Below, piece by piece: positions 9,163 through 59,936 of a stretch of 64,000 nt of DNA. The DNA lies in IMG/VR virus record IMGVR_UViG_3300023179_000009, positions 62,001-126,000 of that record. The stretch is one strand, 5' to 3'. The position numbers were made by a program, and so were the translations under genes. Under the pieces are notes generated by a model. It was given only the letters and a program-made list of their open reading frames with translations, had not been told where the DNA came from and ran no database searches. The stretch's first letter is position 1. Each line of letters starts with the position of its first letter.

Positions 9163-9983
9163 TAGATAGCCAACGTAAGACACTTACAAGCACCACCTGA
9201 TTTGAGAAACTCTGTCATCGGGATTTCAATCACGGTGTATCCTAATTTAGAAAGTTTTTCACAAGTTTTTGGGCAGTTACTCGGGATTATTATTGTTTTA
9301 AAAACTTGAACAGCGTTACAGGCAAAATGTATTGCTTCTTCTTCGGGTACAATTATCTCATTTCCTTTTATTTTGCGTATTTTACCAATACTTTCTTTTT
9401 CAAAAGCCTTGGGAAATATCAAATAATCCATATTTTCCAAAGGACAAAAGCAGGTGTCCAGATGATAAAAGCGAGGGTCTATTAAGCGTACTATTTTGAT
9501 TTCTTTTTTTAAGTATTTTTTAATTTCTTGATAAACACGAATGTCCGTTCTGAAGCCGTGTCCACCAACTAGATGTTCTCCTAAAAATAAACAATCACCA
9601 GCACCTTCAAAATCATATTTTGTAAAAACAACCTTGTCTCCCCTATTTTCAAAATAATCAGCAAAGTGTTGGGTTTCTCCTTGTCTTTCTTTGTGTTTAA
9701 ATTTAGAAACCATAAGTGTCTTGGTGTCTTTTAAATACAAACCGGCGTTTGCTGTGAACACCATGTCCGGTAAATTTTTTTGTGGTAAAATTTTATTTAA
9801 TTTTGCCCCCGATTCTTTCAGGCTCTTACATAATAAGCCCCACTGTTTTAAAAATATTTTTTTGGATGTTTTAGAATTTTTACTCATCCAAGGATTGATT
9901 TCATAATCAATACCAAAATAAGTTGGTCTACAAACTAAAATGTTTTTAAAATCTTTTTTGTTTTCACAAAATATATTTTGCAT
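9162..9983 (-). CDS. Amidinotransferase / dimethylargininase family protein
   Basis: LPDMVFTAN, FEGAGD, FYHLDTCF, EFLKSGGACKCLTL. Confidence 0.9.
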   Translation of the reverse strand: MQNIFCENKKDFKNILVCRPTYFGIDYEINPWMSKNSKTSKKIFLKQWGLLCKSLKESGAKLNKILPQKNLPDMVFTANAGLYLKDTKTLMVSKFKHKERQGETQHFADYFENRGDKVVFTKYDFEGAGDCLFLGEHLVGGHGFRTDIRVYQEIKKYLKKEIKIVRLIDPRFYHLDTCFCPLENMDYLIFPKAFEKESIGKIRKIKGNEIIVPEEEAIHFACNAVQVFKTIIIPSNCPKTCEKLSKLGYTVIEIPMTEFLKSGGACKCLTLAI

Positions 9984-10633
9984 TAAAACATTCCCAGTTC
10001 TGCTCCAGCGGGTTTTGGTGGCATGGGGCTTTGAGGATTTTGATTAACGCTGGTTTGTGGTTGTTGCCCCATCATTCCTGCCATGGGCTCAGCCATACCG
10101 CTATCAACCTGAGTATTGTCTGGTTGGTTTTCTGGGCTGTTTTGTTGTTGATTTTGTTGAACTGGATTTTGCTTTGGGGGCATAATTTCTGTTTTGGGTG
10201 TTGGTTTGGGGTCGTCTACCTTTGGAAAATCTGCGTCTATAAATTTTTCGAAAACTTCTTTGCCAAACAATTTTTGAAGAAGCAAACTAACCGTTGTGGA
10301 GGCATTTGCGGTTTGTTCTTGATTTTTTGTGTCTAACCATCTTCTTGTGTCTTCGATGTTTTTTTTCATCTCTGGGTCGTTTAAACCCTCTAAACGAGAA
10401 AAAATTTGGCCATTTTCTAATCTTTTTCTAGTGGCTTGTTTTCCTCTAAAAAAATTATTTGGTTTCTCTGTGTTCCTTTGATTAAAAGTTATTTTGCTTA
10501 AAGATTGTTGAGAGGCATCCTCGTCAGATAAGCCCTCTATTCCCAAAGCTCTAAAGGTATCTGCCCAGATACTTTTTAATTCTTTTACTTTGTCTTTCTC
10601 TGAATTTTCTAGCCAAATTTTAAATTTCACCAT
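9983..10633 (-). CDS. Hypothetical, Gln/Pro-rich tail, capsid-targeting-like N-terminus
   Basis: MVKFKIWLE; TATAAATA 5 nt upstream. Confidence 0.7.
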   Translation of the reverse strand: MVKFKIWLENSEKDKVKELKSIWADTFRALGIEGLSDEDASQQSLSKITFNQRNTEKPNNFFRGKQATRKRLENGQIFSRLEGLNDPEMKKNIEDTRRWLDTKNQEQTANASTTVSLLLQKLFGKEVFEKFIDADFPKVDDPKPTPKTEIMPPKQNPVQQNQQQNSPENQPDNTQVDSGMAEPMAGMMGQQPQTSVNQNPQSPMPPKPAGAELGMF

Positions 10634-10638
10634 AATAA

Positions 10639-10646
10639 TATTTATA
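10639..10646 (-). promoter_or_regulatory. T4-late-like promoter TATAAATA
   Basis: Exact TATAAATA on minus strand; a divergent TAAATA at 10655-10660 precedes the 10666 gene. Confidence 0.5.
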
Positions 10647-10665
10647 TCCCTGCGTAAATAATTTA

Positions 10666-11442
10666 ATGAAATTTAAAAAATACTTTGAATCTGTGGATAT
10701 TTTTGGTTTTGACACCAAACAAGATTCTTTTGATAAAAACGATGTTTTTCTAAGTAATCCTATAAATCAATTTAATATCGAATTGATGATGAGTATTTTG
10801 TCTCAAAAAAAACTAGGATTTCAAGAAGCAAATTGTTCTTTTTCCAATGAAATCAAATGGGGCAATCAACCTGGATCTTTGAAATTAGAAGTGGATACGG
10901 GTTACACATTTTATTTAAAACAATTAGGAATAGACAAACAAGGTAACCCACGATGGGTTACAAAAAAAATGTTTCAATTAAATCGTCAAGGTTATGGCGG
11001 TACCGAAGATGCTGTTGCTCAAGAGATATTTGAGCAAATCGAAAAATTGTCTTATTCCAATATCGAATCTCCAAAAGAAGACAAGTATAATCTCGGTCTT
11101 TTAGTTGACAACATTTACAAAAAAATAATACGAACTGGAAAATCGATATTCGTTCCAGAAGGTATCAAGAAAATGAATGAAAATTCTTATATTATAAAAT
11201 TTGGCCTAAAAGGGGCTGGTTTAGAGGCACCTGACGGGCAGCGAGTGGAACAAAATCAAACTATGATTTCGTATGATGAAAGTTCTGGGACTATACGTGT
11301 TACCAATTATAATATAGAATCTCCAGTTGGGGGCAAGAGTAGTTGGAGATTAAAGCCAAATGATTTGGATTTGTATTTTTTCCCAACGCAAGACCGCAAC
11401 GAAATAAGCGAAACAATTGCCGTCCACATGAAATATTATTAA
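10666..11442 (+). CDS. Hypothetical, capsid-targeting-like N-terminus
   Basis: 258 aa, MKFKKYFE. Confidence 0.7.
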   Translation: MKFKKYFESVDIFGFDTKQDSFDKNDVFLSNPINQFNIELMMSILSQKKLGFQEANCSFSNEIKWGNQPGSLKLEVDTGYTFYLKQLGIDKQGNPRWVTKKMFQLNRQGYGGTEDAVAQEIFEQIEKLSYSNIESPKEDKYNLGLLVDNIYKKIIRTGKSIFVPEGIKKMNENSYIIKFGLKGAGLEAPDGQRVEQNQTMISYDESSGTIRVTNYNIESPVGGKSSWRLKPNDLDLYFFPTQDRNEISETIAVHMKYY

Positions 11443-11443
11443 A

Positions 11444-11803
11444 ATGCGATTCAAAACACTTTTTAAAAATTATTCAATAGATTTATGGCTAGACGATGAA
11501 AGAGATCCAAAAAATCCAATAATTATTCAAAATTTTGGATCAAGACCTAGTATGGTATGGGTAAAAAGTGTTCCCGAGGCCAAAGAATTAATCAGCACTG
11601 GTAGAGTTAATTTTATTAGTTTTGATAATGACCTGGGTTTACCAGAGGAGGGTAAAGATTTGGCAAAATGGATTGAAGAACAAGCCTTTAATAATAATTT
11701 AAAGCCAATCAGATGGCGTGTTCACAGCATGAACTCCACAGGAAGAAAAGAAATTATGGTGGCCATGCAAAATGCTGATCGTTTTTGGTCACTAGGCAAC
11801 TAA
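11444..11803 (+). CDS. Stand-alone receiver-like (cyclic-phosphate processing receiver, cREC-type) protein
   Basis: LWLDDERDP, ISFDNDLG, VHSMNSTG. Confidence 0.7.
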   Translation: MRFKTLFKNYSIDLWLDDERDPKNPIIIQNFGSRPSMVWVKSVPEAKELISTGRVNFISFDNDLGLPEEGKDLAKWIEEQAFNNNLKPIRWRVHSMNSTGRKEIMVAMQNADRFWSLGN

Positions 11804-11823
11804 ATATTTTATTAGAGGTAAAA

Positions 11824-12234
11824 ATGAAAACTTTCAATGAGTGGATTAAAATAAAAGAACAAGGGCAAATGCACATGGGGAGACCAAATGGGCCAATGGG
11901 TCCAGATGGAAAAGTTTATGGGTGGAGCGGTGGCCCAGCATCTCAAGTTCAAGGAACTGGCACTTGGAAATCAGGACAAAGTTCTGTTGCCACCGGTCGC
12001 CAACTAACACCAGCCCCAGTTCCTTCTTTACCAAAAACAAACAACCAACCCGTTAACGACGAAAAAGAGGCCGAAGGTTTATGGAGTGCCAACAATAGCG
12101 TTGTTCGTGGGGGCTACCTATCTGGTGTCAATAATTATCAACAATTAGTAAATAAAAATTGGCAACAATTACCTCCTGAGGTTAAAGAAATAGCCAAAAA
12201 ATCAATGTTCTCTAGATCTCCTTTTGGAAAATAA
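11824..12234 (+). CDS. Hypothetical, capsid-targeting-like N-terminus
   Basis: ATG at 11824 after GAGG; MKTFNEWIKIKE. Confidence 0.7.
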   Translation: MKTFNEWIKIKEQGQMHMGRPNGPMGPDGKVYGWSGGPASQVQGTGTWKSGQSSVATGRQLTPAPVPSLPKTNNQPVNDEKEAEGLWSANNSVVRGGYLSGVNNYQQLVNKNWQQLPPEVKEIAKKSMFSRSPFGK

Positions 12235-12236
12235 TT

Positions 12237-12827
12237 TCACAAAGGTGAACCTAAATAGTCAAATTCGCTAAGAGAAACCAAACCAGTTCTCCAACTTTTA
12301 TCTCGTGTTATTTGTTTACCAAGAGACTTTTGAGCATTCCATATAATTTGTTTACAATATGTTGCAAATTTAGAATCTATGATAATATTATTTTTTATAG
12401 ATGGTCTATTATTTTTGGGGACATATTTTTTAACAAGTTTTTCTAGTATAATTTCCTGAAACTCGCCAAATTTTTGTCTATTTGCACCATGCCTTCGCCT
12501 GTTTTCCCAAAGATTTTTCAATTCTTTGACAATTGCTTTGATAAATTTATCTTTTACGTATTTGTCCAGTGTTTCGAAACTGGACTCTATAAAACACTGT
12601 CTTTTATAGTATGATCCAGCACGTATGAGTGCTATTCTTAATTCTTGTGTATCATCCTCTATATCATTTGTTAGAGAATTTTGAGAATTTTTCTTTTTAA
12701 GTTCCCAGGCAACATAGTGACATAGTTTCCCAAATTTATTATCTAACAAAATATATTCGTCTGATGTTATAGGGTATTTATTTAATATAGTTTCTAGGGT
12801 TTGATTGCTTTGTTTTCTTTTATTCAT
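12237..12827 (-). CDS. Sigma-factor region-2-like protein lacking region 4
   Basis: DIEDDTQELRIALIRA (2.2-like) and SKFATYCKQIIWN (2.3-like). Confidence 0.5.
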   Translation of the reverse strand: MNKRKQSNQTLETILNKYPITSDEYILLDNKFGKLCHYVAWELKKKNSQNSLTNDIEDDTQELRIALIRAGSYYKRQCFIESSFETLDKYVKDKFIKAIVKELKNLWENRRRHGANRQKFGEFQEIILEKLVKKYVPKNNRPSIKNNIIIDSKFATYCKQIIWNAQKSLGKQITRDKSWRTGLVSLSEFDYLGSPL

Positions 12828-12837
12828 TTTCTCCTTT

Positions 12838-14151
12838 TTAATCTTTCCAAAGTGTTTTCATTTCATCTAATTTTGCCCCAAATTTTATTTCTACTTTCAT
12901 TTTTAATCCGGGACAAATAACGGATTCTGCTTCGCATACATTTTTTATTATTTTGTAAATTTCACGAGCATACTTTATTTCGCAAATCAATCCAAATCCA
13001 TCATGAACACTAAATGCCAGATGTGATTTGTTTTTATCGATTGCATTATATAACAAAATTAATTTTTCTTGACAAGCTGTGGCTGCTACTCCTTGTACAA
13101 CAAAGTTTCTAGCCAAATAAGATTTTCCTTCTTCAAAATTACGAGGGCGACCAAAAAAATCTTCTATAATATTTTTTTTAGCCATATCTTGTTTTTCTTG
13201 CATCCAACTCCACGCCGTTGGAAATCTCTTTTTAACTCTTTCGATAATATTGTTCGATAACTCATCTGATATTTTTAAGTTATTTGACAAACCATTAGAG
13301 CCACAACCGTACATTACTGGTAAAAATATTTTTTTTGATATCTTTCTCTTGCTATCTGTGTCACAATCATCTTCTGTGATTATTTTGTAAATTTGTTCAT
13401 GCAAATCTTTTCCTGAATCTAAAATCTCTTTAAGATTTTCATCTTTTGATAACCATTGTAAAACTGTAACCTCACAATGTCTAAAGTCTGAGCAAACGAA
13501 TCTTAAGTCATACCCCTTAGGTTTCAAGGATTTTTTGACATCTGGCCCCATATTGTGGGGCAAATAACTTTTTACATATTTCTTTACACTATTCATTCTT
13601 CCATTAATTTGACCCTCTATTTCGTAGTAGGGGAATTCGCATCTTTTTTTCTCCAAATTCAAAAGAGGACAAGTCTCTATTTCTGGAAGAACTCTCAGGG
13701 CGAGAGGTAGGTGAATGTTTTTAAAAAGATTTTGCCAATTTTTATTTTTTAAAATCTCTTTAATCCTATATATGCACTCGTTGTAGTTTTCTGGGATTGG
13801 TTTTTTGATTCCTAGAAAATTTTCTAATATTTTTATGTCAAATATGTTTGTTGTAGGGTTTAAAAACCTTTTTGAAAAATAAAAAAAATACGAACATAAA
13901 CCTTTTATATTCCAAACAAATAGACGATCAATATTTTCTTTTTGAAATATTGTTGCATCGAATAGAGATATAATTTCAATAATATTATCATCATTAACAT
14001 CTATCTCTAAAGTTTTTGTCTTGCTAATAATTATTATTTTAAAAGGCGCATTAACCGTGAAGTCGGGCGTTTCTGGGATGGTTTTTAAAAAAACAATATC
14101 TTTTTTATTTAATAAATCTACAACCGCATCGACTGAGGATTGGTCAATCAT
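12838..14151 (-). CDS. polA: Compact family A DNA polymerase
   Basis: Motif A SDFRHCEV, motif B RKISKKIFLPVMYG, motif C SVHDG; 437 aa. Confidence 0.85.
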   Translation of the reverse strand: MIDQSSVDAVVDLLNKKDIVFLKTIPETPDFTVNAPFKIIIISKTKTLEIDVNDDNIIEIISLFDATIFQKENIDRLFVWNIKGLCSYFFYFSKRFLNPTTNIFDIKILENFLGIKKPIPENYNECIYRIKEILKNKNWQNLFKNIHLPLALRVLPEIETCPLLNLEKKRCEFPYYEIEGQINGRMNSVKKYVKSYLPHNMGPDVKKSLKPKGYDLRFVCSDFRHCEVTVLQWLSKDENLKEILDSGKDLHEQIYKIITEDDCDTDSKRKISKKIFLPVMYGCGSNGLSNNLKISDELSNNIIERVKKRFPTAWSWMQEKQDMAKKNIIEDFFGRPRNFEEGKSYLARNFVVQGVAATACQEKLILLYNAIDKNKSHLAFSVHDGFGLICEIKYAREIYKIIKNVCEAESVICPGLKMKVEIKFGAKLDEMKTLWKD

Positions 14152-16256: not shown

Positions 16257-16257
16257 T

Positions 16258-24352: not shown

Positions 24353-24355
24353 TTT

Positions 24356-36621: not shown

Positions 36622-36915
36622 ATGTCTGACACAGAAAAATTAATTAAAGATTCATATTATATTAATTCTAATATGATTGAGTTTTTGATAATAGAAAATC
36701 TTGCTTTAAAATCTTTACTTCACGAAAAAGGAATAGTGGATCCCGAAGAGTACAAGAAACACCAAACACAAGCTGCCCAATTAGTAGAAAGGCGTGTAAG
36801 TGAGCAAATAGAACAATGTAAGAAAAATAACTCAAAAATTTTTGATGTTTTAAATAATTTGGGTGAAAAATCTAATCATCTGATCCATTCAAAAAACGAA
36901 CCTGTTGTTTCTTGA
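36622..36915 (+). CDS. Hypothetical protein
   Basis: 97-aa ORF. Confidence 0.6.
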   Translation: MSDTEKLIKDSYYINSNMIEFLIIENLALKSLLHEKGIVDPEEYKKHQTQAAQLVERRVSEQIEQCKKNNSKIFDVLNNLGEKSNHLIHSKNEPVVS

Positions 36916-37573
36916 TTTTAGTTTTTAATTTACCTAACCCCACCTCGGTCAGCACAACAAAATTCCATCCTAAATTTGTGCAAAAGTTATTTGCTGCAAC
37001 CCATTTGCATTTGTTTTGTTCGTAATTTGTTTGGTTTGCTGGTTTTATTTCCCAAATTTCTATTGAATTGTCAATAAATGTTACTTTTAAATCGGGTATG
37101 TAGTTGTGCCATTTTCCTTTAAAAAAATATGGTATTTTTATATCTTCATATTTAAAGTTAGTCACATCTATGTCCGATTCTAAACACTCAAAAAACTCAC
37201 ACTCCATACCTGATTTATATTCAAAGTCTCTTGAACATTTTTTGGAAGAAAAGGTACCTTGTCTAAATGAAGGTTTCCTTGTTTTTTTTCTTTCTTTTTT
37301 TCCATTCGGCCCAGTTTTAAAATCATGCCACACAGCAACCCTTGTTTGTGTATTTTTTGGCATTACCCTTGATGGGTGTTTTGCTTTATAGTGGGTTTTT
37401 AAACAACGAACTGGTGATTTGCAGTCTGGGCATATGAGGTATTCACGACCTTCATCGTGGTTAGATACAATGTGTTCTTTGTATTCTTCATAATTTTCAT
37501 AATTTTTGCCACAAACAAAACATTGATATCTTCTTGTTTTTGGTTGTCCAGCGTCTTCAAATAGCAAGGGCAT
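36872..37573 (-). CDS. C2H2 zinc-finger plus TnsA-N-like PD-(D/E)xK endonuclease
   Basis: CFVC..H..H and CPDC..H...H; YKSGME, YIPD, WEIKP. Confidence 0.75.
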   Translation of the reverse strand: MPLLFEDAGQPKTRRYQCFVCGKNYENYEEYKEHIVSNHDEGREYLICPDCKSPVRCLKTHYKAKHPSRVMPKNTQTRVAVWHDFKTGPNGKKERKKTRKPSFRQGTFSSKKCSRDFEYKSGMECEFFECLESDIDVTNFKYEDIKIPYFFKGKWHNYIPDLKVTFIDNSIEIWEIKPANQTNYEQNKCKWVAANNFCTNLGWNFVVLTEVGLGKLKTKIKKQQVRFLNGSDD

Positions 37574-38439: not shown

Positions 38440-38480
38440 TTTTGCCTCTATTATAAGTATCCTGATACTATATAGACTAT

Positions 38481-38966
38481 ATGTTGCGTAGTTTTAAAGA
38501 ATTTGTGTTGTCTCAAAAAAATGCTCAATTCAAAGAGCAAGATGCCGCTCCATCAATTGGAGCCGCTCCGGAAACTCCTTTAAATCCCAAAAACTCCACA
38601 ACAAATAAGCATTTTTTTTCTTCGTTAAAAAGACAAATGGGTATGGATAATGATGGTTTGCGTGCTACTTTGGAAGGAGATGCCGTTACAATTTTTCAAG
38701 TTCCCGATTATTCTAAAAAATGGGGATTTTTGGTGGCTGGTCCATGTCCAGCGGTTTTATCTCAAAGAAAAGACGGAAATTATGACATTACTTATTTGTT
38801 AACTCAAAAACAATTATTAAACCCAGAATCTTTTATTTTGTCCTACAAAGCAGGTGACGACATAAACACCTACACTGGAAAAATTGAAGATAAAACAGAG
38901 ATAATAGACTCTGAAAGTTTACAAGACATACTTACAAAACCTTTTTCTTCTTTATCGCCAACATGA
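38481..38966 (+). CDS. Hypothetical, capsid-targeting-like N-terminus
   Basis: MLRSFKEFV. Confidence 0.7.
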   Translation: MLRSFKEFVLSQKNAQFKEQDAAPSIGAAPETPLNPKNSTTNKHFFSSLKRQMGMDNDGLRATLEGDAVTIFQVPDYSKKWGFLVAGPCPAVLSQRKDGNYDITYLLTQKQLLNPESFILSYKAGDDINTYTGKIEDKTEIIDSESLQDILTKPFSSLSPT

Positions 38967-39121
38967 AATTCAAAAAATGGCTAGAAATGACTGACACATC
39001 AAGTGTTGCTGGTTTTTCCAGAAGAGTGGGCTTTGGAAGGCGATGGTGGGTTTCCGATTGGGAACAAAAATTACTAAATTCTCAAAAAAATCAAAAATCA
39101 AAAATTAACAAATCTAAATAA
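38963..39121 (+). CDS. 52-aa protein, capsid-targeting-like N-terminus (not in ORF track)
   Basis: MKFKKWLEMTDTSSVAGFSRRVGFG...; ATGA overlap with upstream stop. Confidence 0.6.
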   Translation: MKFKKWLEMTDTSSVAGFSRRVGFGRRWWVSDWEQKLLNSQKNQKSKINKSK

Positions 39122-42417: not shown

Positions 42418-42846
42418 GTGCAAAATTTTAAATTTAAATATTTTTTTGAACAAATGTATTCTTCAATCGGCGTTGTTGAATATGGACCCGGTTTGAAGGT
42501 TGTTGCTATTATAGATCAAGGAATTGTTGACTTTTATAGGAATTTGATACCAAAATATTATAATGTTAATCCTCAAAAACACAAAGCCCATATAACAATT
42601 GTTCGTGAAAATAAAGAAAGCCCCAAAAATATGGAATTTTGGGGCAAATACCAAAATAAAAAAATAGATTTTTTTTATGATAACAATGTACAAACAGATG
42701 GTGTTTATTTTTGGCTTGACGCATTAAGTGAAGATATCGGAAAAATAAGAGAAGAATTGGGTCTTTCAAAATTTAGAGATGATAGAGAATTTGGGGGCAA
42801 ACTTAGATCTGCATACCACATTACAATTGCGAACACAAAAACATGA
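42418..42846 (+). CDS. 2H phosphoesterase
   Basis: Two HxT motifs: AHITIV and YHITIA. Confidence 0.75.
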   Translation: MQNFKFKYFFEQMYSSIGVVEYGPGLKVVAIIDQGIVDFYRNLIPKYYNVNPQKHKAHITIVRENKESPKNMEFWGKYQNKKIDFFYDNNVQTDGVYFWLDALSEDIGKIREELGLSKFRDDREFGGKLRSAYHITIANTKT

Positions 42847-45388: not shown

Positions 45389-45398
45389 TATATATTTT

Positions 45399-45713
45399 AT
45401 GAGTTTATCTTTTAAAAATTGGCTGAAATCAGAGTCGCAAGCTATAGGATCCACTGGTAAAAGTGATTTACCAACAGGAGTCGCCAAGGCTGCTGGAAAA
45501 GTTGCTCAAAGTTTTTTAGCTCAAGACGCAAACGCATCCGATGTTGCAAAAATTGTTGGCAAAACCAATAACACTTCAAATCTAATCAAATTAGGAGCAC
45601 AAGCCGTCGAAACCGCCCCGAACTCTGATGCCAAGGGGACAAATGCCTTGCAGGTTGCTAGTGCCATTCAAAAAACTGCCGCACAAACAAAACTTAAAAT
45701 GAACAAAAAATGA
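45399..45713 (+). CDS. Ala-rich hypothetical, capsid-targeting-like N-terminus
   Basis: MSLSFKNWLKSE. Confidence 0.7.
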   Translation: MSLSFKNWLKSESQAIGSTGKSDLPTGVAKAAGKVAQSFLAQDANASDVAKIVGKTNNTSNLIKLGAQAVETAPNSDAKGTNALQVASAIQKTAAQTKLKMNKK

Positions 45714-46246
45714 AATTTAAAGATTATTGTGTCGATTGTGATTTTTTAAATTCTAAATTTTTTGAACAAAACTTTTTTACTTTTAAGGATTTTAAAAAAA
45801 ATTTAAATAGTTCAATAAATTTGAAAGGCCCAACCTCCGTCAAGCGATCTTTGGCTGCTGGAAAAGTTAGAAGTCCTTCAAGGCCGGTTGTGTTTTCTTC
45901 TTTAAATAAGCCTTCCGTCATCCCGTCTGTTTTGGAAAATAAAGGCATAAATTCGTGTTTACAAAAAAATGTTGATTTTGTTGTAAACAAAATCAAGGAT
46001 CATCACGAAAGACTTTCAAAAAAATACAACTCCACCTTAGCAACAATGATCATATCTGCTGCTTTGGTTGGTTCATTGTTTCCCATTCCTGGTGCTACGA
46101 TTTTTTCTTGTCTTCCTTTTTTGGGTTTAGCGGAAATGATAAACTTTTTGAAAAAAAATCCCAAAATACTTAAAAAAATAGACATGTTCTACTCCGCTGA
46201 TAAGCATGATGTTGAAAAAGACGCAATTCAAATTGATGTCTTGTAA
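45710..46246 (+). CDS. Hypothetical protein with C-terminal hydrophobic segment
   Basis: MKFKDY start; LATMIISAALVGSLFPIPG. Confidence 0.6.
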   Translation: MKFKDYCVDCDFLNSKFFEQNFFTFKDFKKNLNSSINLKGPTSVKRSLAAGKVRSPSRPVVFSSLNKPSVIPSVLENKGINSCLQKNVDFVVNKIKDHHERLSKKYNSTLATMIISAALVGSLFPIPGATIFSCLPFLGLAEMINFLKKNPKILKKIDMFYSADKHDVEKDAIQIDVL

Positions 46247-48442: not shown

Positions 48443-49621
48443 ATCCCTAAAAGAATTCAAGAAGATCACAAAAGATTCAGGGACGTAGTTTCCGGAAGAA
48501 CAAGAAGGGAACTCAAGCGTCTAATCAAATCAGGTGCGATAGTTCGGCAAAGGCCAAAAGGTGGCAAGGTTACTATTTCCATTCCACAAATTGACATTCC
48601 ACACTTTGTTCATGGTGACTCAGGTGAAGGGATTGGTCGGGGTCCGGGGAAAGAAGGTGATACTATTGGCCGTGACCCACAGCCCGGTAATGGCAATCAA
48701 GCTGGAGATCAAGAAGGTGAGGGCATTCACATTCAAATCGACATGGAGGATGTTCTTGCTTTTATGGAAGAAGAGTTAAAACTTCCATTTATGAAACCTA
48801 AGCCGAACGAAACATTTGAAGAAGTTAAGATCAAGTATAATGATATTTCAAAAGTTGGTCTTAACTCATTGCGGCACACACGCCGTACAATGAAAGAAGC
48901 ATTGAAGCGTCTGGCGATGGGAGGCAAGTTGGACCAAGTTCAACTTGTCCCCGGAGCCAGCGTTCCAATGAAAGTTATAACACCTATTAAACAAGATTTT
49001 CGTTATAGGCAATATCGTGAAATAAAAATACCAGCATCCAATGCTGTGATATTTTTCGCCAGAGATTGCTCTGGATCGATGGATGATTATAAGTGCGACA
49101 TAGTTTCGGATATGGCTTGGTGGATAGACCGTTGGATAAAAAGATTTTATAAAAGGGTAGATCATTGTTATTATGTTCATGACACACGTGCTCAAGAAGT
49201 TAATGAGCAAGAATTTTATACTTATAGATACGGGGGAGGAACCCAATGCTCCTCGGCATTTGAATCAATATCCCAGCAATTTGAAAACAGATATCCTCCT
49301 CAAAAATTTAACATTTATGTTTTTTATTTCACCGATGGCGATAATTGGGATAATGATAATGAAAAAGTAGTAAAAATAATTCAAGAAAAATTTCCTCAAG
49401 GAGTTGTAAATTTCGTAGGAATAACTCAAATTTGTTCATATTCAAATGAAAATAGTGTAAAAGAATTTATTGATAGAAAAATAAAATCAAATGAACTTGA
49501 CGCAGAACACATCAGAACTGCCGAAGTTGGATCAAATCTAAGAAATGGCAAAATGAGTGAAGATGATCGGAACAGTCAGATTCTGGATGCCATTAAAAAA
49601 CTCTTATCTGTAGAAGCATGA
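48443..49621 (+). CDS. yeaH: YeaH/YhbH (DUF444) vWA protein
   Basis: MIDAS DCSGS, GGGTQCSS, YFTDGDNW; probable ATC start after GAGGTG. Confidence 0.9.
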   Translation: MPKRIQEDHKRFRDVVSGRTRRELKRLIKSGAIVRQRPKGGKVTISIPQIDIPHFVHGDSGEGIGRGPGKEGDTIGRDPQPGNGNQAGDQEGEGIHIQIDMEDVLAFMEEELKLPFMKPKPNETFEEVKIKYNDISKVGLNSLRHTRRTMKEALKRLAMGGKLDQVQLVPGASVPMKVITPIKQDFRYRQYREIKIPASNAVIFFARDCSGSMDDYKCDIVSDMAWWIDRWIKRFYKRVDHCYYVHDTRAQEVNEQEFYTYRYGGGTQCSSAFESISQQFENRYPPQKFNIYVFYFTDGDNWDNDNEKVVKIIQEKFPQGVVNFVGITQICSYSNENSVKEFIDRKIKSNELDAEHIRTAEVGSNLRNGKMSEDDRNSQILDAIKKLLSVEA

Positions 49622-50613
49622 GTGATAAAAAGTTTAAAGAATTTGTTGACCAAGGTGTTGCGGCAGCAAATAATTATTTTTATACTGGTAGATATGTTAA
49701 CGCTTTAGAAATACTGTCAGCAGTTAAACAGGTTGATCCGAATAATGATATTGTTGAGTTGCTTATTCAGAAAATTTGTTGTGAACAATTTAATATCAAG
49801 TCTCCCGATTTAAATTATTATTTTGGAGAACATTGGCTTGGTCAATCGCTAGAAAATAAAAGTATAGAAATTTTTTGTGACCAAGGAATGGGAGACACAA
49901 TAAATTTACTTCGTTATGTAAAACAATTAAAGAAAGAATATCCCAATTGTAAAATTGTTTTGAATTATTATGCTTTTTTTAATCAATTTGAAAGGTTAAT
50001 GCAAAATCAATCTTATATTGATTTATTTACTCCTTTTCACACTAAGTGTGATTATCATACAAATATAATGAGCTTACCTTGTATTCTTAATGGGATACAA
50101 CTTGATATTTATTACCCGGTTCATTTTGATAAAATCTTAGACTTGCCTCCGCCGCCTCAAATTTATTTTGAAGAATTTGAATCTTTAAATTTAAGTGATA
50201 AAAATAAAATAGGTGTAGTTTGGCAAACAAATATAGATAATCCATTATCTAAACAAAAATCAATAAATGTTGAACTTTTTGATATTTTTAAAGATTTAGA
50301 TTTTGAATTTTATTGTTTACAACCACAGGTCAAAACCCCAGATTGGATCGATTGTTTGCCAATCGAAGACCTACACGACACAGCCAGATTCATAACACAA
50401 TGTGATTTTATTATATCTGTTGATACTGTCACACTGCATCTTGCTGGAGTTTTAGGTAAAAAAACTTTTGGATTAATTCCTTTTGATCACGATCCCAGAT
50501 GGGGCGAAGGCTCCAATAACATTTGGTACCCATCAGTGGAGTTGTTTAGACAAAACAATGATCAAGATTGGTCTATTGCTCTAAATCAAATAAAAGATAA
50601 AATAAAAATTTAA
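49618..50613 (+). CDS. TPR plus GT9-like (heptosyltransferase-type) glycosyltransferase
   Basis: DQGMGDTI, IGVVW, IISVDTVTLHLAG, PRWG. Confidence 0.75.
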   Translation: MSDKKFKEFVDQGVAAANNYFYTGRYVNALEILSAVKQVDPNNDIVELLIQKICCEQFNIKSPDLNYYFGEHWLGQSLENKSIEIFCDQGMGDTINLLRYVKQLKKEYPNCKIVLNYYAFFNQFERLMQNQSYIDLFTPFHTKCDYHTNIMSLPCILNGIQLDIYYPVHFDKILDLPPPPQIYFEEFESLNLSDKNKIGVVWQTNIDNPLSKQKSINVELFDIFKDLDFEFYCLQPQVKTPDWIDCLPIEDLHDTARFITQCDFIISVDTVTLHLAGVLGKKTFGLIPFDHDPRWGEGSNNIWYPSVELFRQNNDQDWSIALNQIKDKIKI

Positions 50614-52228: not shown

Positions 52229-52229
52229 T

Positions 52230-54103: not shown

Positions 54104-54137
54104 GATAACATTTTTAACCTCTCAAAGGAGTGAGAGA

Positions 54138-55753: not shown

Positions 55754-56121
55754 GACATGTAACTTTAAAAGATTTTTTTCAAAGCGTTAGTTACAAAATA
55801 AACGACTCCTCAGAATACATGTGGGAGTGTTATGGCAAAAATGCTTTTTCTTTGGATGTGGACAAAAAACGGGGAAAAGAATTTACTTTCTCCACTGGAA
55901 TTATTTTTGATACAAAAACTTCTAAAGTTTATCAGATGGATTCTTGGGATTATAAAAAAAGAATTATATATCGGTGGATTAATCCTAGTTATGTTAAAAA
56001 ATACTTAAAAGAATCTAAAAAAAGAGGCATTGATCCTTTTAAGGATGAAGAGCAATTTAAAATAATGGATGTTTCGGCAACTAAGATTCTTAGAGAAACT
56101 AAAATTGCCATGTCAAAATAG
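55750..56121 (+). CDS. Hypothetical protein
   Basis: 123-aa ORF. Confidence 0.65.
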   Translation: MRHVTLKDFFQSVSYKINDSSEYMWECYGKNAFSLDVDKKRGKEFTFSTGIIFDTKTSKVYQMDSWDYKKRIIYRWINPSYVKKYLKESKKRGIDPFKDEEQFKIMDVSATKILRETKIAMSK

Positions 56122-56215
56122 TTTTCCTTGACACTCAACAAGATTTGTGCAAAGATCAATACGGTGTAAGCGATGGTTCTTGCGTTTCGGAATTAAATGA
56201 TTTTAGGAGATAAAA

Positions 56216-59043
56216 TTGGAAACTACAGGATACGAAAACCTTCATAGACATAGCGATTTTAGCCTCAAAATTTAGGGGCCTTAATGACGAAAGTCATTAA
56301 GCAAACTGGATGAATTCGGGGAAGCCCTAACGTAAAGACGAGGGTAATCCCGAGCCAAGCATGTAATGCATTACATGAAGGTGTAGAGACTACTGGCGAG
56401 GTTTAGCCCTCTTAATTACCAGCAAGAGCGTCCAGCACCCCTAGGGGTGATGATATAGTCCACTCCACAAGAAACTGTGGGCAAAAGTGCTTAGACGGGT
56501 TTGCAAAAGTATCTGAATATGCCGAGTATCAAAAGCAAATAAATCAAAAGTATTTGTGTATCACCGATCATGGTGTGATGGGGGCTATTCCACAACAAGT
56601 TGCAGAATCTGAAAAACATAATTTATATCCTTTGTTTGGATGTGAACTTTATGTTAATCCGATGCAACCAAAAGTTTCTTCACGATCAGAGTCGGCGGAG
56701 TTTCGTAAATCTTTAGAAGATGAAGCAACGCAAAAAAAGTTTGATAAATCTTATCATTTATTGGCCATAGCCTACAATGATGAGGGTTATTCTAATCTTG
56801 TTCGTTTAACTTCTTGGGGCTGGATACACGGCTTCTATAGAAAGCCTAGGGTAAATCATGAAGCACTCATGAAATATAAAGAAGGAATTGTGTTCACCTC
56901 CGCCTGTGCCAACTCAGAAATAGCAAGAGCTTTTTTTGATGGTGGCGACGAGGCTGGCTTCGCCATGTTGGAAAAATATATGGCTATGTTTGGTGAGCAT
57001 TTTTATCTTGAACTTATGATGCTCGATTTTAAAGATCAAAAGCCTTATGATGCTTTTTTAATTCGTGCTCATGATAAGTATCATGTTCCGCTGACAATGA
57101 GCACCGATTGTTTTGTTAAAGGCACTTTGGTTCTAACTAATTTTGGTTTCAAAAATATCGAAGAAATTAAAGTTGGCGATAAGGTTTTTACTCATAAAAA
57201 CAGGTGGAGGTTAGTTGAACATGTTGGATCACGTTCACTAAGATCAAATGAAAAAATTTACCGTGTATCAACTAGTGCTGGTACATTTGCTTATGAAGCT
57301 ACGGGCAATCACGAAGTATATGTGGCCACTTATGAAAAAAATAAATGGAACTTTGATTGGGTAAGAACAGACGGATTGAAATCAAAAGAACACCACCTCA
57401 CAGTTCCTAAGATAAGTGAATCTAAAGTTTTCTCCGAAAAGGATTTAAGCGAAATAGATATTTTGTCCTTCTTGAAAAAAGAAGATTTTCAAGAAGGAAC
57501 AGACTACAAATCATCCAGAAAAGGCAACATGGGTTGCCGCCTTCAGTTCAACAGGGACACTCAAGAATTTTGGTCTTATCGTGGTTGGGATAGAAAATTT
57601 AGAACCACTATTCCCAGAATGTTAAAGGTAGATGATGATTTTGTTAAAATGTTGGGATGGTATATCGCTGAAGGTTGGAGTGAAAAAAATAGCAATCAGG
57701 TGGGTTTTGCTTTTCACATAGAAGAAAAACATGTAGCTGAGTGGTTAATTTCTTATTTTTCACGTTTTGATATTATTGCAAAGATTTATAAGGTCTCTGA
57801 GAACGGTATAGCAATTCGTTTTTCTTCAGTTGTCTTTAATCGTCTTTTGGGTCAAATGTGTGGTTTTGGTGCTAAAAACAAACATCTACCGAAGCCCAAC
57901 AATCAAGTTTGGCTAAAGATGTGGTCGAAAAGACAACTTTCTATGATTATTCGTGAGTATTGGCGTGGCGATGGGGGCAACGCTGCAAATAATGATGGTT
58001 TTATTTTCACATCCACATCTAAAATTTTAATACAAGAGATCGCTTTTGTTTTTAATTCTTGTGGTGTTTTTTCTTTACCTTGTGAAGAAAAAAATAGAAA
58101 AGATACATGGAATACCAAAAAATATATATCCTACACGGGAGGAAGAGGCGATCAAGTGTTGTCTTTTTTAACGAATGGAGATTGTAAGCCTTTTTTGCAC
58201 AAGGAAGTAATTGAATTTAAAGATTATTATTTGGTGCCAATCAAAGAAATCACTGCTCTTAAACACCAAGAACAAGAAGTTCACTGTTTTCAGGTAAAGG
58301 ACGATCATTCGTTCACTGCTAATCTTTACGCTGTGAGTAACTGCCACTACTGTCTTAAAGAGCAAAGTCATAATCAACGTCTTATGCTCATGCAGCAAAA
58401 CAAAAGAACGCTTGCTGAGATGGAGGCACTTGTAGAATCCGGCCAAGCAGAGGATCTATTTGAACTACAAGACACAAATCTATGGCTGAAGAGTGAGGAT
58501 GAACTAAATGAAATGTGGGAAGAAAAATTTCAAGATGTTATCGATTATGAACTTTTCAAACAATCCAAAGCAAACACAGTCAAGATTGCAGAGTTTGCCA
58601 AAGGCGTACAAATCAATAAAGAAATAAAACTTCCTAAAATAAATGACGCAGATGCACTTTTGTGGGAAGAAATCAAAAAAGGTTTTATGAAGCGTGGTTG
58701 TCCTAGAACTCCTGTTTATATAAAGCGAATCCGTGAAGAATACGATCTAATTTCAGAGAAGGGCTTTTCTAGTTACTTTTTAATTCAAAAAATGATGGTG
58801 GATGAAGCTCGAAGGAAGAGTCCAGAGATATTAGGTTTTGGAGACGGATCAGAAGCCGTTGGTCCTGGTAGAGGTTCGGTTGCTGGCTCTTTGGTTGCCT
58901 ATTGTCTTCGTCTTCATGATGTGGAGCCAATATTCCACGATTTGAGATTTAGTCGTTTTCTAAGTCCAGCACGTGGTGGCAAGCAAATGAAAATTCGCCA
59001 CACAATAGACCCAATATCTCATGAATCAATCAATTTGGATTAA
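56216..59043 (+). CDS. dnaE: DNA polymerase III alpha, N-terminal part only (PHP plus start of palm); exons 56216-56265 and 56490-59043; contains intein
   Basis: TTG start after AGGAGA; spliced HRHSDFSLLDG, TDHG, GCE, STD|CHY, GPGRGSVAGSLVAY, RFSRFLSPAR then stop. Confidence 0.9.
56266..56489 (+). ncRNA. Group I intron (224 nt, no ORF) in dnaE
   Basis: P GAATTCGGGGAA, Q AATCCCGAGC, R GTAGAGACTA (56383), S GATATAGTCC (56452); U.G in P1, terminal G; removal restores the frame. Confidence 0.92.
57109..58341 (+). mobile_element. Intein with LAGLIDADG endonuclease (411 aa) in DnaE PHP domain
   Basis: CFVKGTLVLT...VGDKV, ATGNHEV, MLGWYIAEG, REYWRGDG, ...AVSN|C. Confidence 0.93.
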
Positions 59044-59936
59044 TATCTGTTCATCATTCTTCGCATATATGATTTCATCAATGCTTTTTGCAAATTGTGA
59101 ACAGCGGGATGATCTTTAAACATTTCGGGATTCATTTCGGGCATTTGGTCATCTTTTTCCATTGAGGCTTCCATGTCCTCATCTTCCATGCCTTCCATGT
59201 CCTCATCTTCCATGCCTTCCATGTCCTCATCTCCCATGCCTTCCATGTCCTCATCTTCCATGCCTTCCATGTCCTCATCTTCCATGCCTTCCATGTCCTC
59301 ATCTTCCATGCCTTCCATGTCCTCATCTCCCATGCCTTCCATGTCCTCATCTTCCATGCCTTCCATGTCCTCATCTTCTTCATCGTGATCAACTTGGTCA
59401 TCATCATGATCTTCTTGGCTTAGTTGATTGTGAAAAGGAGCGGCAACTTCTTCGTTCATGGCTCTTGCCAACTTGTTACACATGTCTGGTCCGTATGATT
59501 CGTGGGCCATAACCTCAGAGATGTGTTTGTAGGTTTCACGGTGATTCAAACACTCTGCCACAAGACAGCCTAGTAAACCACTCTGTTTTAGGTTTCTTAC
59601 TAAAGTTTCAATAATAACAGGGTTTTTAGAAGAGGCTTTTGTTACTTTTGATAAAAGAGCAGACTCCTCAACAGTAGGCAATTTGACAGATTTTTTTTCA
59701 TTATTTGCTTCTTGAGTTTTTGGCTCATAAACCAACTCGTCATCGCCTTCGCCTGCTAATCCTTTTGATGAATTTTTTTTACCCTTGGTTGTTTTAGCAA
59801 CATAAGGAGATTTGCCACCTTCTGGGCGATCAGGTGAGGTTGATGGGTCCACATTATCTCCATCGTTGCATACCTTGGGCTTGTCTTGTAATTTTCCTTT
59901 AGAATCCAAGTATTCATCAAATTTCATAAAAGCCAT
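59040..59936 (-). CDS. Acidic repeat protein, capsid-targeting-like N-terminus
   Basis: MAFMKFDEYLD; EDEDMEGM repeats; SD GAGG. Confidence 0.75.
   Translation of the reverse strand: MAFMKFDEYLDSKGKLQDKPKVCNDGDNVDPSTSPDRPEGGKSPYVAKTTKGKKNSSKGLAGEGDDELVYEPKTQEANNEKKSVKLPTVEESALLSKVTKASSKNPVIIETLVRNLKQSGLLGCLVAECLNHRETYKHISEVMAHESYGPDMCNKLARAMNEEVAAPFHNQLSQEDHDDDQVDHDEEDEDMEGMEDEDMEGMGDEDMEGMEDEDMEGMEDEDMEGMEDEDMEGMGDEDMEGMEDEDMEGMEDEDMEASMEKDDQMPEMNPEMFKDHPAVHNLQKALMKSYMRRMMNRY
59169..59378 (-). repeat. 24-bp coding tandem repeat, 8.75 units
   Basis: EDEDMEGM units; GDEDMEGM variant at units 3 and 7. Confidence 0.95.

What the first reader, a model, noticed from the sequence alone, without database searches (positions are those of the whole stretch)
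9983..59936. About nine unrelated proteins share a T4 capsid-targeting-like N-terminus
Seen: MVKFKIWLE (10633-), MKFKKYFE (10666), MKTFNEWIKIKE (11824), MLRSFKEFV (38481), MKFKKWLE (38963), MQNFKFKYFFE (42418), MSLSFKNWLKSE (45399), MKFKDY (45710), MAFMKFDEYL (59936-); weaker MRFKTLF (11444). Established: T4 internal proteins use a ~10-aa leader (MKTYQEFIAE type) for prohead packaging, cleaved after Glu. Inference: a dispersed set of head-packaged proteins injected at infection, i.e. candidate early anti-defence or takeover effectors.
Basis: partly seen in the sequence, partly recalled or inferred. Interest (0 to 1): 0.65.

Follow-up and report, generated by a model that had tools for sequence, protein, structure and literature searches.

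The report
Capsid-targeting leaders on many phage proteins
A 459-kb freshwater phage with a T4-type head puts one ~10-residue N-terminal tag, almost the same as phage T4's capsid-targeting sequence, on about 35 unrelated proteins (7 in this window), which most likely marks them for loading into the head and delivery into the host with the DNA.

Summary
The window is part of a 458,813-bp uncultured freshwater phage. A motif F-x-x-[W/F/Y]-[L/I/V/F/M] starts at residues 2-7 in 46 of 640 called genes, against 5.9 expected (p 6e-26). About 35 are hydrophilic proteins with no detectable similarity beyond the leader. Sites 42418 and 45710, and the 'weaker' 11444, do not.

The genome has a T4-type head module: Peptidase_S77 prohead protease, Gp23 capsid protein, portal and terminase. 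The invariant leader columns match residues 4, 7, 8 and 10 of T4 IPIII, the residues experiments tie to targeting and processing. A Glu follows the motif in 24 of 35 carriers.

The motif recurs in a relative with 53% GC but not in phage G. It is conserved in orthologues while neighbouring residues and codons vary.

Carriers are also preceded by a TAnATA box about 5 nt before ATG. This resembles a T4 late promoter placed to give leaderless mRNA.

The best reading is a T4-like capsid-targeting propeptide system expanded about tenfold. Packaging, cleavage and injection are inferred, not shown. The anti-defence role is speculative.

The parts
9983..10633 (-). Carrier gene, 216 aa, no Pfam/PHROG match. 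Leader MVKFKIWLE is encoded at 10607-10633.
   Evidence: PWM 19.5. Orthologues in 10 relatives all keep F-x-x-W-[LIF] while neighbouring residues vary.
10639..10644 (-). TAAATA box (part of TATAAATA) 5 nt upstream of the ATG of the 9983-10633 gene. Late-promoter-like; the spacing predicts a leaderless mRNA.
   Evidence: A box is also present upstream of the orthologues.
10655..10660 (+). TAAATA box 5 nt upstream of the ATG at 10666. The 32-nt divergent intergenic region 10634-10665 holds both boxes.
   Evidence: A GTAAATA-type box is conserved upstream of orthologues in relatives.
10666..11442 (+). Carrier gene, 258 aa, a clade-wide conserved family. Leader MKFKKYFE is followed by the conserved ATDIFG-type start of the mature part.
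   Evidence: 179 homologues on contigs up to 693 kb. 104 of 120 N-termini fit M-x(0-4)-F-[KR]-x-[FYW]-[FLIV]-E. In the AlphaFold2 model, residues 1-4 and 6-33 have pLDDT below 50, and blocks from about residue 41 are mostly above 85. No clear fold match.
11824..12234 (+). Carrier gene, 136 aa, with a Gly/Pro-rich region after the leader MKTFNEWIKIKE.
   Evidence: PWM 16.5. A homologue in IMG/VR locus L233 keeps MKTFNEWLEE. One 153-nt contig from a metatranscriptome library matches 11852-12004 exactly, which is weak evidence.
38469..38474 (+). TATATA box 6 nt upstream of the ATG at 38481.
38481..38966 (+). Carrier gene, 161 aa, ORFan. Leader MLRSFKEFV.
   Evidence: PWM 15.7. No homologues in the loci fetched.
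38963..39121 (+). Carrier gene, 52 aa, basic, overlapping the stop of the preceding carrier gene by 4 nt. Leader MKFKKWLE.
   Evidence: PWM 20.4.
45389..45394 (+). TATATA box 4 nt upstream of the ATG at 45399.
45399..45713 (+). Carrier gene, 104 aa, basic, Ala/Lys-rich. Leader MSLSFKNWLKSE.
   Evidence: PWM 21.1.
59040..59936 (-). Carrier gene, 298 aa, net charge about -50, with a run of acidic 8-residue repeats. Leader MAFMKFDEYLD.
   Evidence: (PWM 12.8). A homologue in a 572-kb phage (L182) starts MKSLKEYLDE, so Y-L-D-E is kept and F is replaced by L.
49618..50613 (+). Doubtful member: 331 aa, glycosyltransferase-9-like C-terminus. MSDKKFKEFV fits the regex.
   Evidence: PWM 13.7; weak GT9 match. 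Its G001 homologue aligns only from residue 270 of a 566-aa protein and has no leader.
42418..42846 (+). The leader-like VQNFKFKYFFE exists only if a GTG start is used; the likely start is the ATG at 42454.
   Evidence: Seven distinct homologues in other phages begin at the position equivalent to 42454. The PHROG match starts at residue 28.
45710..46246 (+). MKFKDYC has Cys at the aliphatic position.
   Evidence: Fails the regex and the PWM. No homologues found to test it.
11444..11803 (+). It is a cREC_REC (PF20274) domain protein sitting inside the carrier cluster.
   Evidence: E 5.6e-21. MRFKTLF lacks the second aromatic residue.

Best explanation
The shared N-terminus is a capsid-targeting propeptide of the T4 kind.

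The phage builds its head the T4 way: portal, then a protein core with a gp21-type protease, then a Gp23 shell. I infer the following steps:
1. About 35 otherwise unrelated proteins carry a short amphipathic leader, M-x(0-4)-F-x-x-[W/F/Y]-[L/I/V/F]-x(0-3)-E.
2. The leader's hydrophobic face (positions i, i+3, i+4) docks them onto the assembling prohead core.
3. The prohead protease removes the leader after the nearby Glu.
4. The mature proteins stay inside the head and leave it with the DNA at infection.

Many carriers are stand-alone genes with a TAnATA box about 5 nt before the ATG. This is the geometry of a T4 late promoter that would start transcription at the A of the ATG, so they would be made late, when proheads assemble, from leaderless mRNAs.

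Shown here:
- the motif, its enrichment and its selection at the peptide level
- the T4-type head genes
- the match to functionally mapped T4 residues
- the enrichment of Glu after the motif
- the promoter-like box

Inferred, not shown: docking, cleavage, packaging, injection and timing.
For: 1. Enrichment. 46 of 640 genes match against 5.9 expected (p 6e-26); 8 of 81 in the window against 0.75.

2. It is not a composition effect. A 532,729-bp relative with 52.7% GC (capsid protein 82% identical) shows 27 matches against 5.4 expected (p 2e-11). Phage G (30% GC, no Peptidase_S77) shows 3 against 4.4. Synonymous codons vary freely: all six Leu codons are used, and TTT/TTC follow each genome's GC content.

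3. The carriers share nothing beyond the leader. The leader lies outside folded domains. FMN_red starts at residue 20 and DUF5662 at residue 22. In the AlphaFold2 model of the 10666 family, residues 1-4 and 6-33 have pLDDT below 50.

4. T4-type head module. Peptidase_S77 scores 88.5 bits and Gp23 288.7 bits. Portal, terminase, sheath and tube are also found. The capsid protein aligns an L-M-N-E|A site with T4's F-L-T-E|A maturation site.

5. Match to T4. T4 IPI, IPII and IPIII begin MKTF/YxEF. Mutagenesis places targeting at residues 4 and 7 and processing at 8 and 10 (PMC9026906). These are the invariant columns here.

6. Glu lies 5-8 residues after the first Phe in 24 of 35 carriers, against 26% expected (p 1.6e-7). 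In the family next to the portal gene, M1 and E15 are invariant and F4 and W7 are at least 90% conserved, with an [LIYM]-x-E|G site.

7. Orthologues keep the leader at 26-47% body identity.

8. Wider distribution. The DNA pattern for M-K-T-F-x-E-W-[L/F] occurs in 115 IMG/VR stretches, against 6 for a codon-permuted control. In 64 of 88 cases it is the first ATG after a stop. Eight of the 10 longest such contigs encode Gp23.

9. The TAnATA box lies 3-8 nt before the ATG in 14 of 35 carriers against 27 of 605 other genes here (p 2e-9). In the GC-rich relative the figures are 20 of 26 against 24 of 754 (p 1.5e-22). The modal spacing of 5 nt equals the T4 box-to-start distance (PMC2988020). Non-carriers with the box include the terminase gene in G000, and in G001 a 2048-aa protein and a gene whose N-termini resemble G000 genes near its tail and baseplate genes.
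Against: - There is no direct evidence of packaging or cleavage.
- No homologue of the T4 scaffold gp22 was found (PF25623, phrog_237, hhalign). The docking partner is only inferred from a syntenic, acidic, helical 298-aa protein.
- No gp55 or gp33 homologue was found, so the factor that reads the box is unknown. The genome is an estimated 91% complete.
- The Glu is at varying distances, at the T4-like +6 position in only 9 of 35.
- Some cargo looks like ordinary cytoplasmic enzymes: a CCA-adding/HD enzyme and an FMN reductase.
- T4 gp61.1 also has the motif; to my knowledge it is not reported as a head protein, so the motif alone may not prove packaging.
- The complex prediction of scaffold with leader gave no answer.
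Confidence: 0.68

Rival explanations
1. The leader is a recognition tag for something other than the prohead. Candidates are a phage chaperone, a protease-activated propeptide that keeps the proteins inactive until late, a degradation tag, or targeting to another assembly such as the tail, baseplate or membrane. The resemblance to the T4 sequence would then be convergent: any amphipathic aromatic helix.
For: No gp22-type scaffold homologue was found. The complex prediction gave no answer. Cargo includes enzymes not obviously useful inside a capsid. T4 gp61.1 carries the motif and, to my knowledge, is not reported as a head protein.
Against: The invariant columns coincide with the four functionally mapped T4 residues. 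The motif tracks phages with Gp23 capsids and is absent from phage G. One conserved carrier family sits between the portal and protease genes and has an invariant [LIYM]-x-E site of the gp21 type. The carriers have late-promoter-like boxes.
Confidence: 0.17
2. The motif is a by-product of translation or transcription start constraints: leaderless mRNAs or AT-rich starts favour certain first codons, with no function for the peptide.
For: Carriers are short of Shine-Dalgarno-like sequences (17% against 46%). They have a promoter-like box abutting the ATG.
Against: The same peptide motif appears in a 53% GC relative with different codons. Trp (TGG) occupies +3 in 18 of 35 carriers. In G001, 24 genes with the same box, including a 2048-aa protein, lack the peptide motif. 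Shuffling within the N-termini gives 11 matches against 46 observed. AT-rich phage G shows no excess.
Confidence: 0.04
3. The carriers are prohead core or scaffold components themselves, like T4 gp67 and gp68. They would be degraded and expelled during maturation rather than delivered to the host.
For: The g438146 family lies between the portal and protease genes, as gp67/gp68 do in T4. The 10666 family is conserved across the whole clade.
Against: Most carriers are fast-evolving ORFans: only 5 of 35 have a homologue in the 533-kb relative. Some are enzymes. This fits cargo better than structural core. The reading may still hold for a few members and is compatible with the targeting mechanism.
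Confidence: 0.11

Closest known systems
Capsid-targeting sequence (CTS) of phage T4 internal proteins IPI, IPII and IPIII
   Same: A 10-19-residue N-terminal leader on unrelated proteins. Aromatic residues at positions 4 and 7, an aliphatic at 8 and Glu near 10 (MKTYQEFIAE or MKTFKEF.. against MKTFQEWLNE-type here). The phage has a gp21-type protease and a Gp23 shell.
   Different: About 35 carriers instead of 3-4. Trp is preferred at position 7. The offset from Met1 varies (0-4 residues) and so does the distance to Glu. The mature parts are not homologous to the T4 internal proteins and are not uniformly basic. No gp22 homologue was found. Carrier genes have a promoter-like box abutting the ATG, whereas the T4 ip genes have ordinary leaders with ribosome-binding sites.
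Propeptides of ejection and inner-body proteins in phiKZ-like giant phages (SPN3US, phiKZ)
   Same: Many head-internal proteins are processed by a gp21-related prohead protease after Glu, and the propeptides are thought to target them to the prohead (PMC5694885).
   Different: Those propeptides are mostly 80-130 residues long and not a shared decapeptide. Those phages lack a Gp23-family capsid module of the kind found here.
T4 late promoters (8-bp TATAAATA box read by gp55/gp33/gp45)
   Same: An AT-rich TA-A/T-ATA box with no -35 element. The 5-nt spacing to the ATG equals the box-to-start distance in T4 (PMC2988020). The box is also found before the terminase gene.
   Different: Here the box abuts the start codon, predicting leaderless mRNA. 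The third position of the six-base core is degenerate (TAAATA, TATATA, TACATA, TAGATA). No gp55 or gp33 homologue was detected.
Phage P1 Dar system and P22 ejection proteins
   Same: Proteins are packaged in the head and delivered with the DNA, and some protect against host restriction.
   Different: Their incorporation depends on specific protein-protein hierarchies, not on a common short N-terminal tag. No sequence relation was seen.

Membership tests
T4-type capsid-targeting sequence (CTS) propeptide | Located at the extreme N-terminus of otherwise unrelated proteins | tested here: met
   The motif starts at residues 2-7. The positional profile peaks at residue 4 (24 genes) and falls to background beyond about residue 10. 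There is no similarity among the 35 carriers beyond the leader.
T4-type capsid-targeting sequence (CTS) propeptide | Aromatic residues at the positions of IPIII residues 4 and 7 (targeting determinants) | tested here: met
   Phe is at position 0 by definition, with W/F/Y (18/13/4) three residues later. F4 and W7 are at least 90% conserved in the g438146 family. The T4 sequences come from record AF158101 and the mutagenesis summary from PMC9026906.
T4-type capsid-targeting sequence (CTS) propeptide | An aliphatic residue followed by Glu, giving a gp21-type cleavage site (IPIII residues 8 and 10) | tested here: inconclusive
   Glu lies at +5 to +8 in 24 of 35 carriers against 26% expected (p 1.6e-7), but exactly at +6 in only 9. 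E15 is invariant in family A2. F/L/I/V-E|A is conserved in the 10666 family. Actual cleavage was not observable.
T4-type capsid-targeting sequence (CTS) propeptide | The phage encodes a gp21-type prohead protease and a Gp23-type shell | tested here: met
   PF03420 scores 88.5 bits at genome position 440573-441007. PF07068 scores 288.7 bits at 442316-443521. Portal and terminase were found by phmmer.
T4-type capsid-targeting sequence (CTS) propeptide | A gp22-type scaffolding core to which the leader binds | tested here: not met
   No match to PF25623 or phrog_237. hhalign of the syntenic 298-aa protein family against T4 gp22 gives probability 0.5%. An acidic, helical protein does lie between the protease and capsid genes, so a functional analogue is likely but homology is not shown.
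T4-type capsid-targeting sequence (CTS) propeptide | The leader is separable from the folded cargo | tested here: met
   Pfam domains begin at residue 20 (FMN_red) and 22 (DUF5662). In the AlphaFold2 model, residues 1-4 and 6-33 have pLDDT below 50 and the rest is mostly above 85. The T4 IPI Pfam domain likewise starts at residue 20.
T4-type capsid-targeting sequence (CTS) propeptide | Carriers are physically packaged in proheads, the leader is removed, and the leader suffices to package a foreign protein | not testable with these tools
   The phage is uncultured and no virion proteome exists. The complex prediction gave no verdict.
T4 internal proteins IPI/IPII/IPIII (as protein families) | Sequence homology of the mature part | tested here: not met
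   No IPI_T4 or other internal-protein family was found in any carrier. They are not homologues of the T4 internal proteins; only the leader is shared.
T4 late promoter | AT-rich TATA-type box about 10 bp upstream of the start site, with no -35 element | tested here: inconclusive
   The box is present at a fixed 4-6 nt from the ATG and strongly enriched at carriers. Transcription starts were not mapped: only contig-level RNA data are available.
T4 late promoter | gp55 late sigma factor and gp33 co-activator are encoded | tested here: not met
   phmmer with T4 gp55 and gp33 finds nothing. phrog_234 has no match. PF16805 gives only 14.9 bits, below its cut-off.

The most novel reading that the evidence does not exclude
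A whole clade of freshwater huge phages (at least 390 IMG/VR contigs, genomes up to about 690 kb) uses the ancient T4 capsid-targeting code to load dozens of fast-evolving, mostly unknown proteins into the head. These amount to about 5% of the gene content and include a tRNA-repair-type nucleotidyltransferase and an extremely acidic repeat protein. They are expressed as a dedicated regulon of leaderless late mRNAs. If so, the injected proteome of uncultured T4-superfamily phages can be read directly from sequence, and these phages deliver a protein arsenal about ten times larger than T4's.
Probability: 0.45. Interest if true: 0.78.

Novelty: new member of a known kind. Interest (0 to 1): 0.62.

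Why it matters
Which phage proteins enter the host with the DNA is normally learned only from virion proteomics of cultured phages. If the T4 targeting code is conserved this deeply, packaged cargo could be predicted from sequence alone in uncultured T4-superfamily phages. T4 and this clade share only about 29-36% capsid-protein identity.

The list of about 35 carriers, seven of them in this window, would then be a ready set of candidate first-minute effectors, such as anti-restriction, tRNA repair and host takeover functions. It would also supply natural leader variants for protein-delivery engineering in T4.

The coupling to a promoter box that abuts the start codon points to a leaderless late regulon. 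In the papers searched I found no description of either feature for huge phages, and the T4 ip genes do not have this arrangement.

Tried and rejected
- Complex prediction. The syntenic scaffold-like protein (alignment A1) with the first 45 residues of the g438146 family (A2) scored 0.00, no verdict. This is not evidence either way.
- Homology of the 298-aa protein between protease and capsid genes to T4 gp22. None was found by Pfam, PHROG or hhalign.
- Search for the T4 late-transcription factors gp55 and gp33. None was found.
- Fold of the conserved 10666 family. Foldseek found no hit at E<=1e-3. The best VIA Z of 8.3 covers only half the model, within the range the tool describes as common. 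The fold is left unassigned.
- Pfam and PHROG scans of 33 carriers (all but the 331-aa GT9-like ORF in PHROGs, and two not scanned at all). Most are ORFans.
- First promoter test with the strict TATAAATA within 45 nt. Only 5 of 39 against 8 of 601, and structural genes lacked it. It was replaced by the position-specific TAnATA test.
- RNA evidence. No run holding the locus is an RNA run. A metatranscriptome from the same study yields one 153-nt contig inside 11824-12234. Contigs cannot show starts or strand.
- Composition or codon artefact, recent duplication, and signal peptides were considered and rejected. Seven regex hits are hydrophobic signal or transmembrane N-termini and were excluded.
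- The PWM statistics (37 against 0.28) are fitted to the data, so I do not rely on them. The regex test is the fair one.
- Whether this clade is the 'moraphage' lineage of PMC12619734 could not be decided.
Full report
WHAT THE WINDOW IS. The 64-kb window is bases 62,001-126,000 of a single 458,813-bp viral contig (34.9% GC, CheckV completeness 91%). Near-identical DNA occurs in lake and freshwater metagenomes from several independent studies. The only DNA relative among deposited phages is an unannotated 595-kb uncultured phage. The capsid protein is 78% identical to that phage's and only about 29-32% identical to those of cultured phages (Stenotrophomonas RAS14/CM1, Listeria LIS04, cyanomyoviruses). 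At least 390 IMG/VR stretches encode a relative of the capsid protein (tblastn E<=1e-3). The 80 best are 81-98% identical and lie on contigs up to 533 kb.

CHECK OF THE OBSERVATION. I called genes over the whole genome with a simple codon-usage caller (640 genes).
- It hits 46 genes, against 5.9 expected from the rate at internal positions (p 6e-26).
- Shuffling residues 2-12 within each protein gives 11.2 +/- 3.1 hits.
- Windows after internal Met match at 1.1%.
- The start position peaks sharply at residue 4.
- Within the window, 8 of 81 genes match against 0.75 expected. Outside the window, where the motif was not defined, 38 of 559 match.

Seven hits are hydrophobic signal or membrane N-termini. 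About 35 are hydrophilic proteins of 52-720 aa. With the leader removed, no pair of the 35 gives a BLASTP hit at E<=1e-3, so 'unrelated proteins' is correct.

Seven are good: 9983-10633(-), 10666-11442, 11824-12234, 38481-38966, 38963-39121, 45399-45713 and 59040-59936(-). Three are not:
- 42418 depends on a GTG start. Seven distinct homologues in other phages all begin at the residue equivalent to the ATG at 42454.
- 45710 has Cys at the aliphatic position and has no homologues to test it.
- 11444 lacks the second aromatic residue and is a cREC_REC domain protein.

One further regex hit, 49618-50613, is a glycosyltransferase-like protein. Its homologue in a relative has no leader, so I count it as doubtful.

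IT IS A PEPTIDE-LEVEL SIGNAL, NOT COMPOSITION. I fetched a complete 532,729-bp relative (G001; capsid protein 82% identical). Its GC content is 52.7%. The same test gives 27 hits against 5.4 expected (p 2e-11), with leaders such as MKTFYEWLHE and MKSFSEWMNE. Phage G has 30% GC, is 498 kb long and has no T4-type protease. It gives 3 hits against 4.4 expected. At the conserved columns all six Leu codons are used, and Phe codons follow each genome's GC content. Trp fills the second aromatic position in 18 of 35 carriers.

CONSERVATION IN ORTHOLOGUES.
- The 10666 family has 179 homologues, on contigs up to 693 kb. 104 of 120 N-termini read M-x(0-4)-F-[KR]-x-[FYW]-[FLIV]-E followed by a conserved start of the mature part. 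The residues before the Phe vary in number and kind.
- Orthologues of 9983-10633 in ten relatives all keep F-x-x-W-[LIF].
- A 115-aa family lies between the portal and protease genes. It has M1 and E15 invariant and F4 and W7 at least 90% conserved, with an [LIYM]-x-E|G site.
- Only 5 of the 35 carriers have any homologue in G001, against 151 of 640 genes overall. In four of those five the leader is recognisably kept, even at 26-47% identity of the body.

The carriers are therefore a fast-turning-over set that shares a constrained tag.

THE LEADER IS A SEPARATE MODULE. Where the cargo has a known domain, the domain begins after the leader: FMN_red at residue 20 and DUF5662 at residue 22. An AlphaFold2 model of the 10666 family has mean pLDDT 81. 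Residues 1-4 and 6-33 are below 50, and blocks from about residue 41 onward are mostly 85-94. The T4 IPI Pfam domain likewise starts at residue 20.

COMPARISON WITH T4, DONE ON THE T4 RECORD. From AF158101, IPI begins MKTFKEFTS and IPII and IPIII begin MKTYQEFIAE. A review of the Black laboratory's work states the following (PMC9026906):
- The first 10 residues of IPIII suffice for packaging.
- Targeting depends mainly on residues 4 and 7, and processing on residues 8 and 10.
- The leaders are 10-19 residues long.

The four constrained columns here fall on exactly those residues: Phe, the aromatic three residues later, the aliphatic next to it, and a following Glu. Glu occurs 5-8 residues after the Phe in 24 of 35 carriers, against 26% expected (p 1.6e-7), though at the exact T4 spacing in only 9.

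THE MACHINERY IS PRESENT. The genome encodes the following, clustered at about 431-444 kb:
- a Peptidase_S77 (gp21-type) prohead protease, 88.5 bits
- a Gp23-family capsid protein, 288.7 bits
- T4-like portal and large terminase, plus sheath, tube, gp4, gp13, gp15 and gp25

The capsid protein aligns an L-M-N-E|A site with T4's F-L-T-E|A maturation cleavage site. Three consecutive MKTF-type genes lie 4-7 kb downstream of the capsid gene, and another lies between the portal and protease genes.

A 298-aa acidic, helical protein sits between the protease and capsid genes, where T4 has its scaffold gp22. It shows no detectable homology to gp22. This is a defining feature tested and not met at the level of homology.

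DISTRIBUTION. The degenerate DNA pattern for M-K-T-F-x-E-W-[L/F] occurs in 115 stretches of IMG/VR. A control with the same codons in permuted order occurs in 6. In 64 of 88 matches examined, the ATG is the first after an in-frame stop. Several contigs carry two or three such genes in tandem. Of the ten longest contigs with a match, eight encode a Gp23-family capsid protein. T4 itself has four such N-termini: the three internal proteins plus gp61.1. The T4-like jumbo phage RAS14 has two plausible ones.

A SECOND, REGULATORY SIGNATURE. Carriers are often stand-alone units. 49% are on the minus strand against 24% of other genes (p 0.0016). 51% have a divergent upstream neighbour against 23%. Fewer have Shine-Dalgarno-like sequences.

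A TAnATA box lies 3-8 nt before the ATG as follows:
- in this genome, 14 of 35 carriers against 27 of 605 other genes (p 2e-9)
- TAAATA alone in this genome, 8 of 35 against 9 of 605 (p 6e-7)
- in the GC-rich relative, 20 of 26 against 24 of 754 (p 1.5e-22), with none at a control distance

The modal spacing is 5 nt. T4 late promoters are an 8-bp TATA box spanning -13 to -6 (PMC2988020). The same geometry here would start transcription at the A of the ATG, giving leaderless mRNA. The box is conserved upstream of orthologues. It also precedes many of the IMG/VR hits, typically as 'ctagatagggc' directly before the ATG.

Non-carrier genes with the box include the terminase gene here. In G001 they include a 2048-aa protein and a gene whose N-termini resemble G000 genes that lie near its tail and baseplate genes. 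This fits a late class and shows that the box does not by itself impose the peptide motif.

Two cautions apply. No gp55 or gp33 homologue was found. No transcription starts could be mapped. The T4 ip genes do not have this arrangement.

MECHANISM PROPOSED. The leader is a T4-type capsid-targeting propeptide.
- Shown: the motif, its selection and modularity, the T4-type head genes, the match to the mapped T4 residues, the Glu enrichment and the promoter-like box.
- Inferred: the leader's hydrophobic face docks the proteins on the prohead core. The protease removes the leader after the Glu. The mature proteins remain in the head and exit with the DNA. The genes are transcribed late.

I put this at about 0.68. 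The main rival (about 0.17) is a tag for another partner or process. A start-codon-context artefact is largely excluded. Some members, such as the family next to the portal gene and the clade-wide 10666 family, may be core or internal structural proteins rather than effectors.

WHAT THE CARGO IS. Most carriers are ORFans. The exceptions are:
- a 720-aa HD plus tRNA nucleotidyltransferase protein
- an FMN-reductase-like flavoprotein
- a DUF5662 protein
- a 54-aa SHOCT-motif peptide

In the window, 59040-59936 has net charge about -50 and a run of acidic repeats. 38963 and 45399 are small basic proteins. 11824 has a Gly/Pro-rich linker. An anti-defence role is plausible by analogy with T4 IPI and IPIII (PMC3012670, PMC9391042) but is not supported by any direct evidence here.

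NOVELTY. The T4 capsid-targeting sequence is textbook knowledge, and CTS-like leaders in close T-even relatives are known. I found no paper in the searched library linking capsid targeting to huge or metagenomic phages. I therefore file this as a new member of a known kind. Its notable features are an expansion of about tenfold, deep conservation of the code, and a leaderless late-promoter-like arrangement.

Noticed in passing
window 10634-10665, 38469-38474, 45389-45394; genome-wide: A TAnATA box about 5 nt before the ATG marks carriers, the terminase gene and a few other genes. The spacing predicts leaderless mRNAs from T4-late-like promoters, yet no gp55 or gp33 homologue is detectable.
   Followed up: yes
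window 59040-59936 (-): A 298-aa protein with net charge about -50 and roughly nine tandem acidic 8-residue repeats (Glu/Asp/Met/Gly). It could be a DNA mimic, but this was not tested.
   Followed up: no
window 11444-11803 (+): A cREC_REC (cyclic-phosphate processing receiver, PF20274, E 5.6e-21) protein sits inside the carrier cluster at 9983-12234. In relatives this slot holds different small leader-bearing genes, so it behaves like a hypervariable locus.
   Followed up: partly
window 36872-37573 (-): A weak homologue of the T4 gp4 head completion protein (phmmer E 1.2e-5) on the minus strand, a few hundred bases from the 38481/38963 carrier pair.
   Followed up: no
genome 209332-211494 (-), outside the window: An HD-domain plus tRNA nucleotidyltransferase (CCA-adding type) protein of 720 aa carries the leader. 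Orthologues in relatives keep it. A tRNA-repair enzyme as possible head cargo would be unusual.
   Followed up: partly
genome 183496 (-), outside the window: The gene called at 182006-183112 probably starts upstream at a TTG preceded by AAGGTGG. That start gives an N-terminus MKSFKEWFELNEE, one more carrier missed by ATG-first gene calling.
   Followed up: partly
T4 record AF158101, 18966-19130 (-) (L003): T4 gp61.1 is a 54-aa hypothetical protein. It starts MKTFKEFIKE followed by a Gly-rich stretch, like the small carriers here. To my knowledge it has not been described as a head protein.
   Followed up: no
IMG/VR loci L188, L229, L230, L243, L253: Two or three genes with the exact MKTFxEWL start lie in tandem within a few kb, reminiscent of the hypervariable internal-protein loci of T-even phages.
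   Followed up: partly
G001 (L107-L133) against the window's genome: Two phages whose capsid proteins are 82% identical differ by 18 points in GC content (52.7% against 34.9%). They share homologues for only 151 of 640 genes.
   Followed up: no
window 8501-13500: The locus is found nearly intact in freshwater and lake metagenomes of at least six studies between 2011 and 2025. One metatranscriptome contig of 153 nt matches 11852-12004 exactly.
   Followed up: partly
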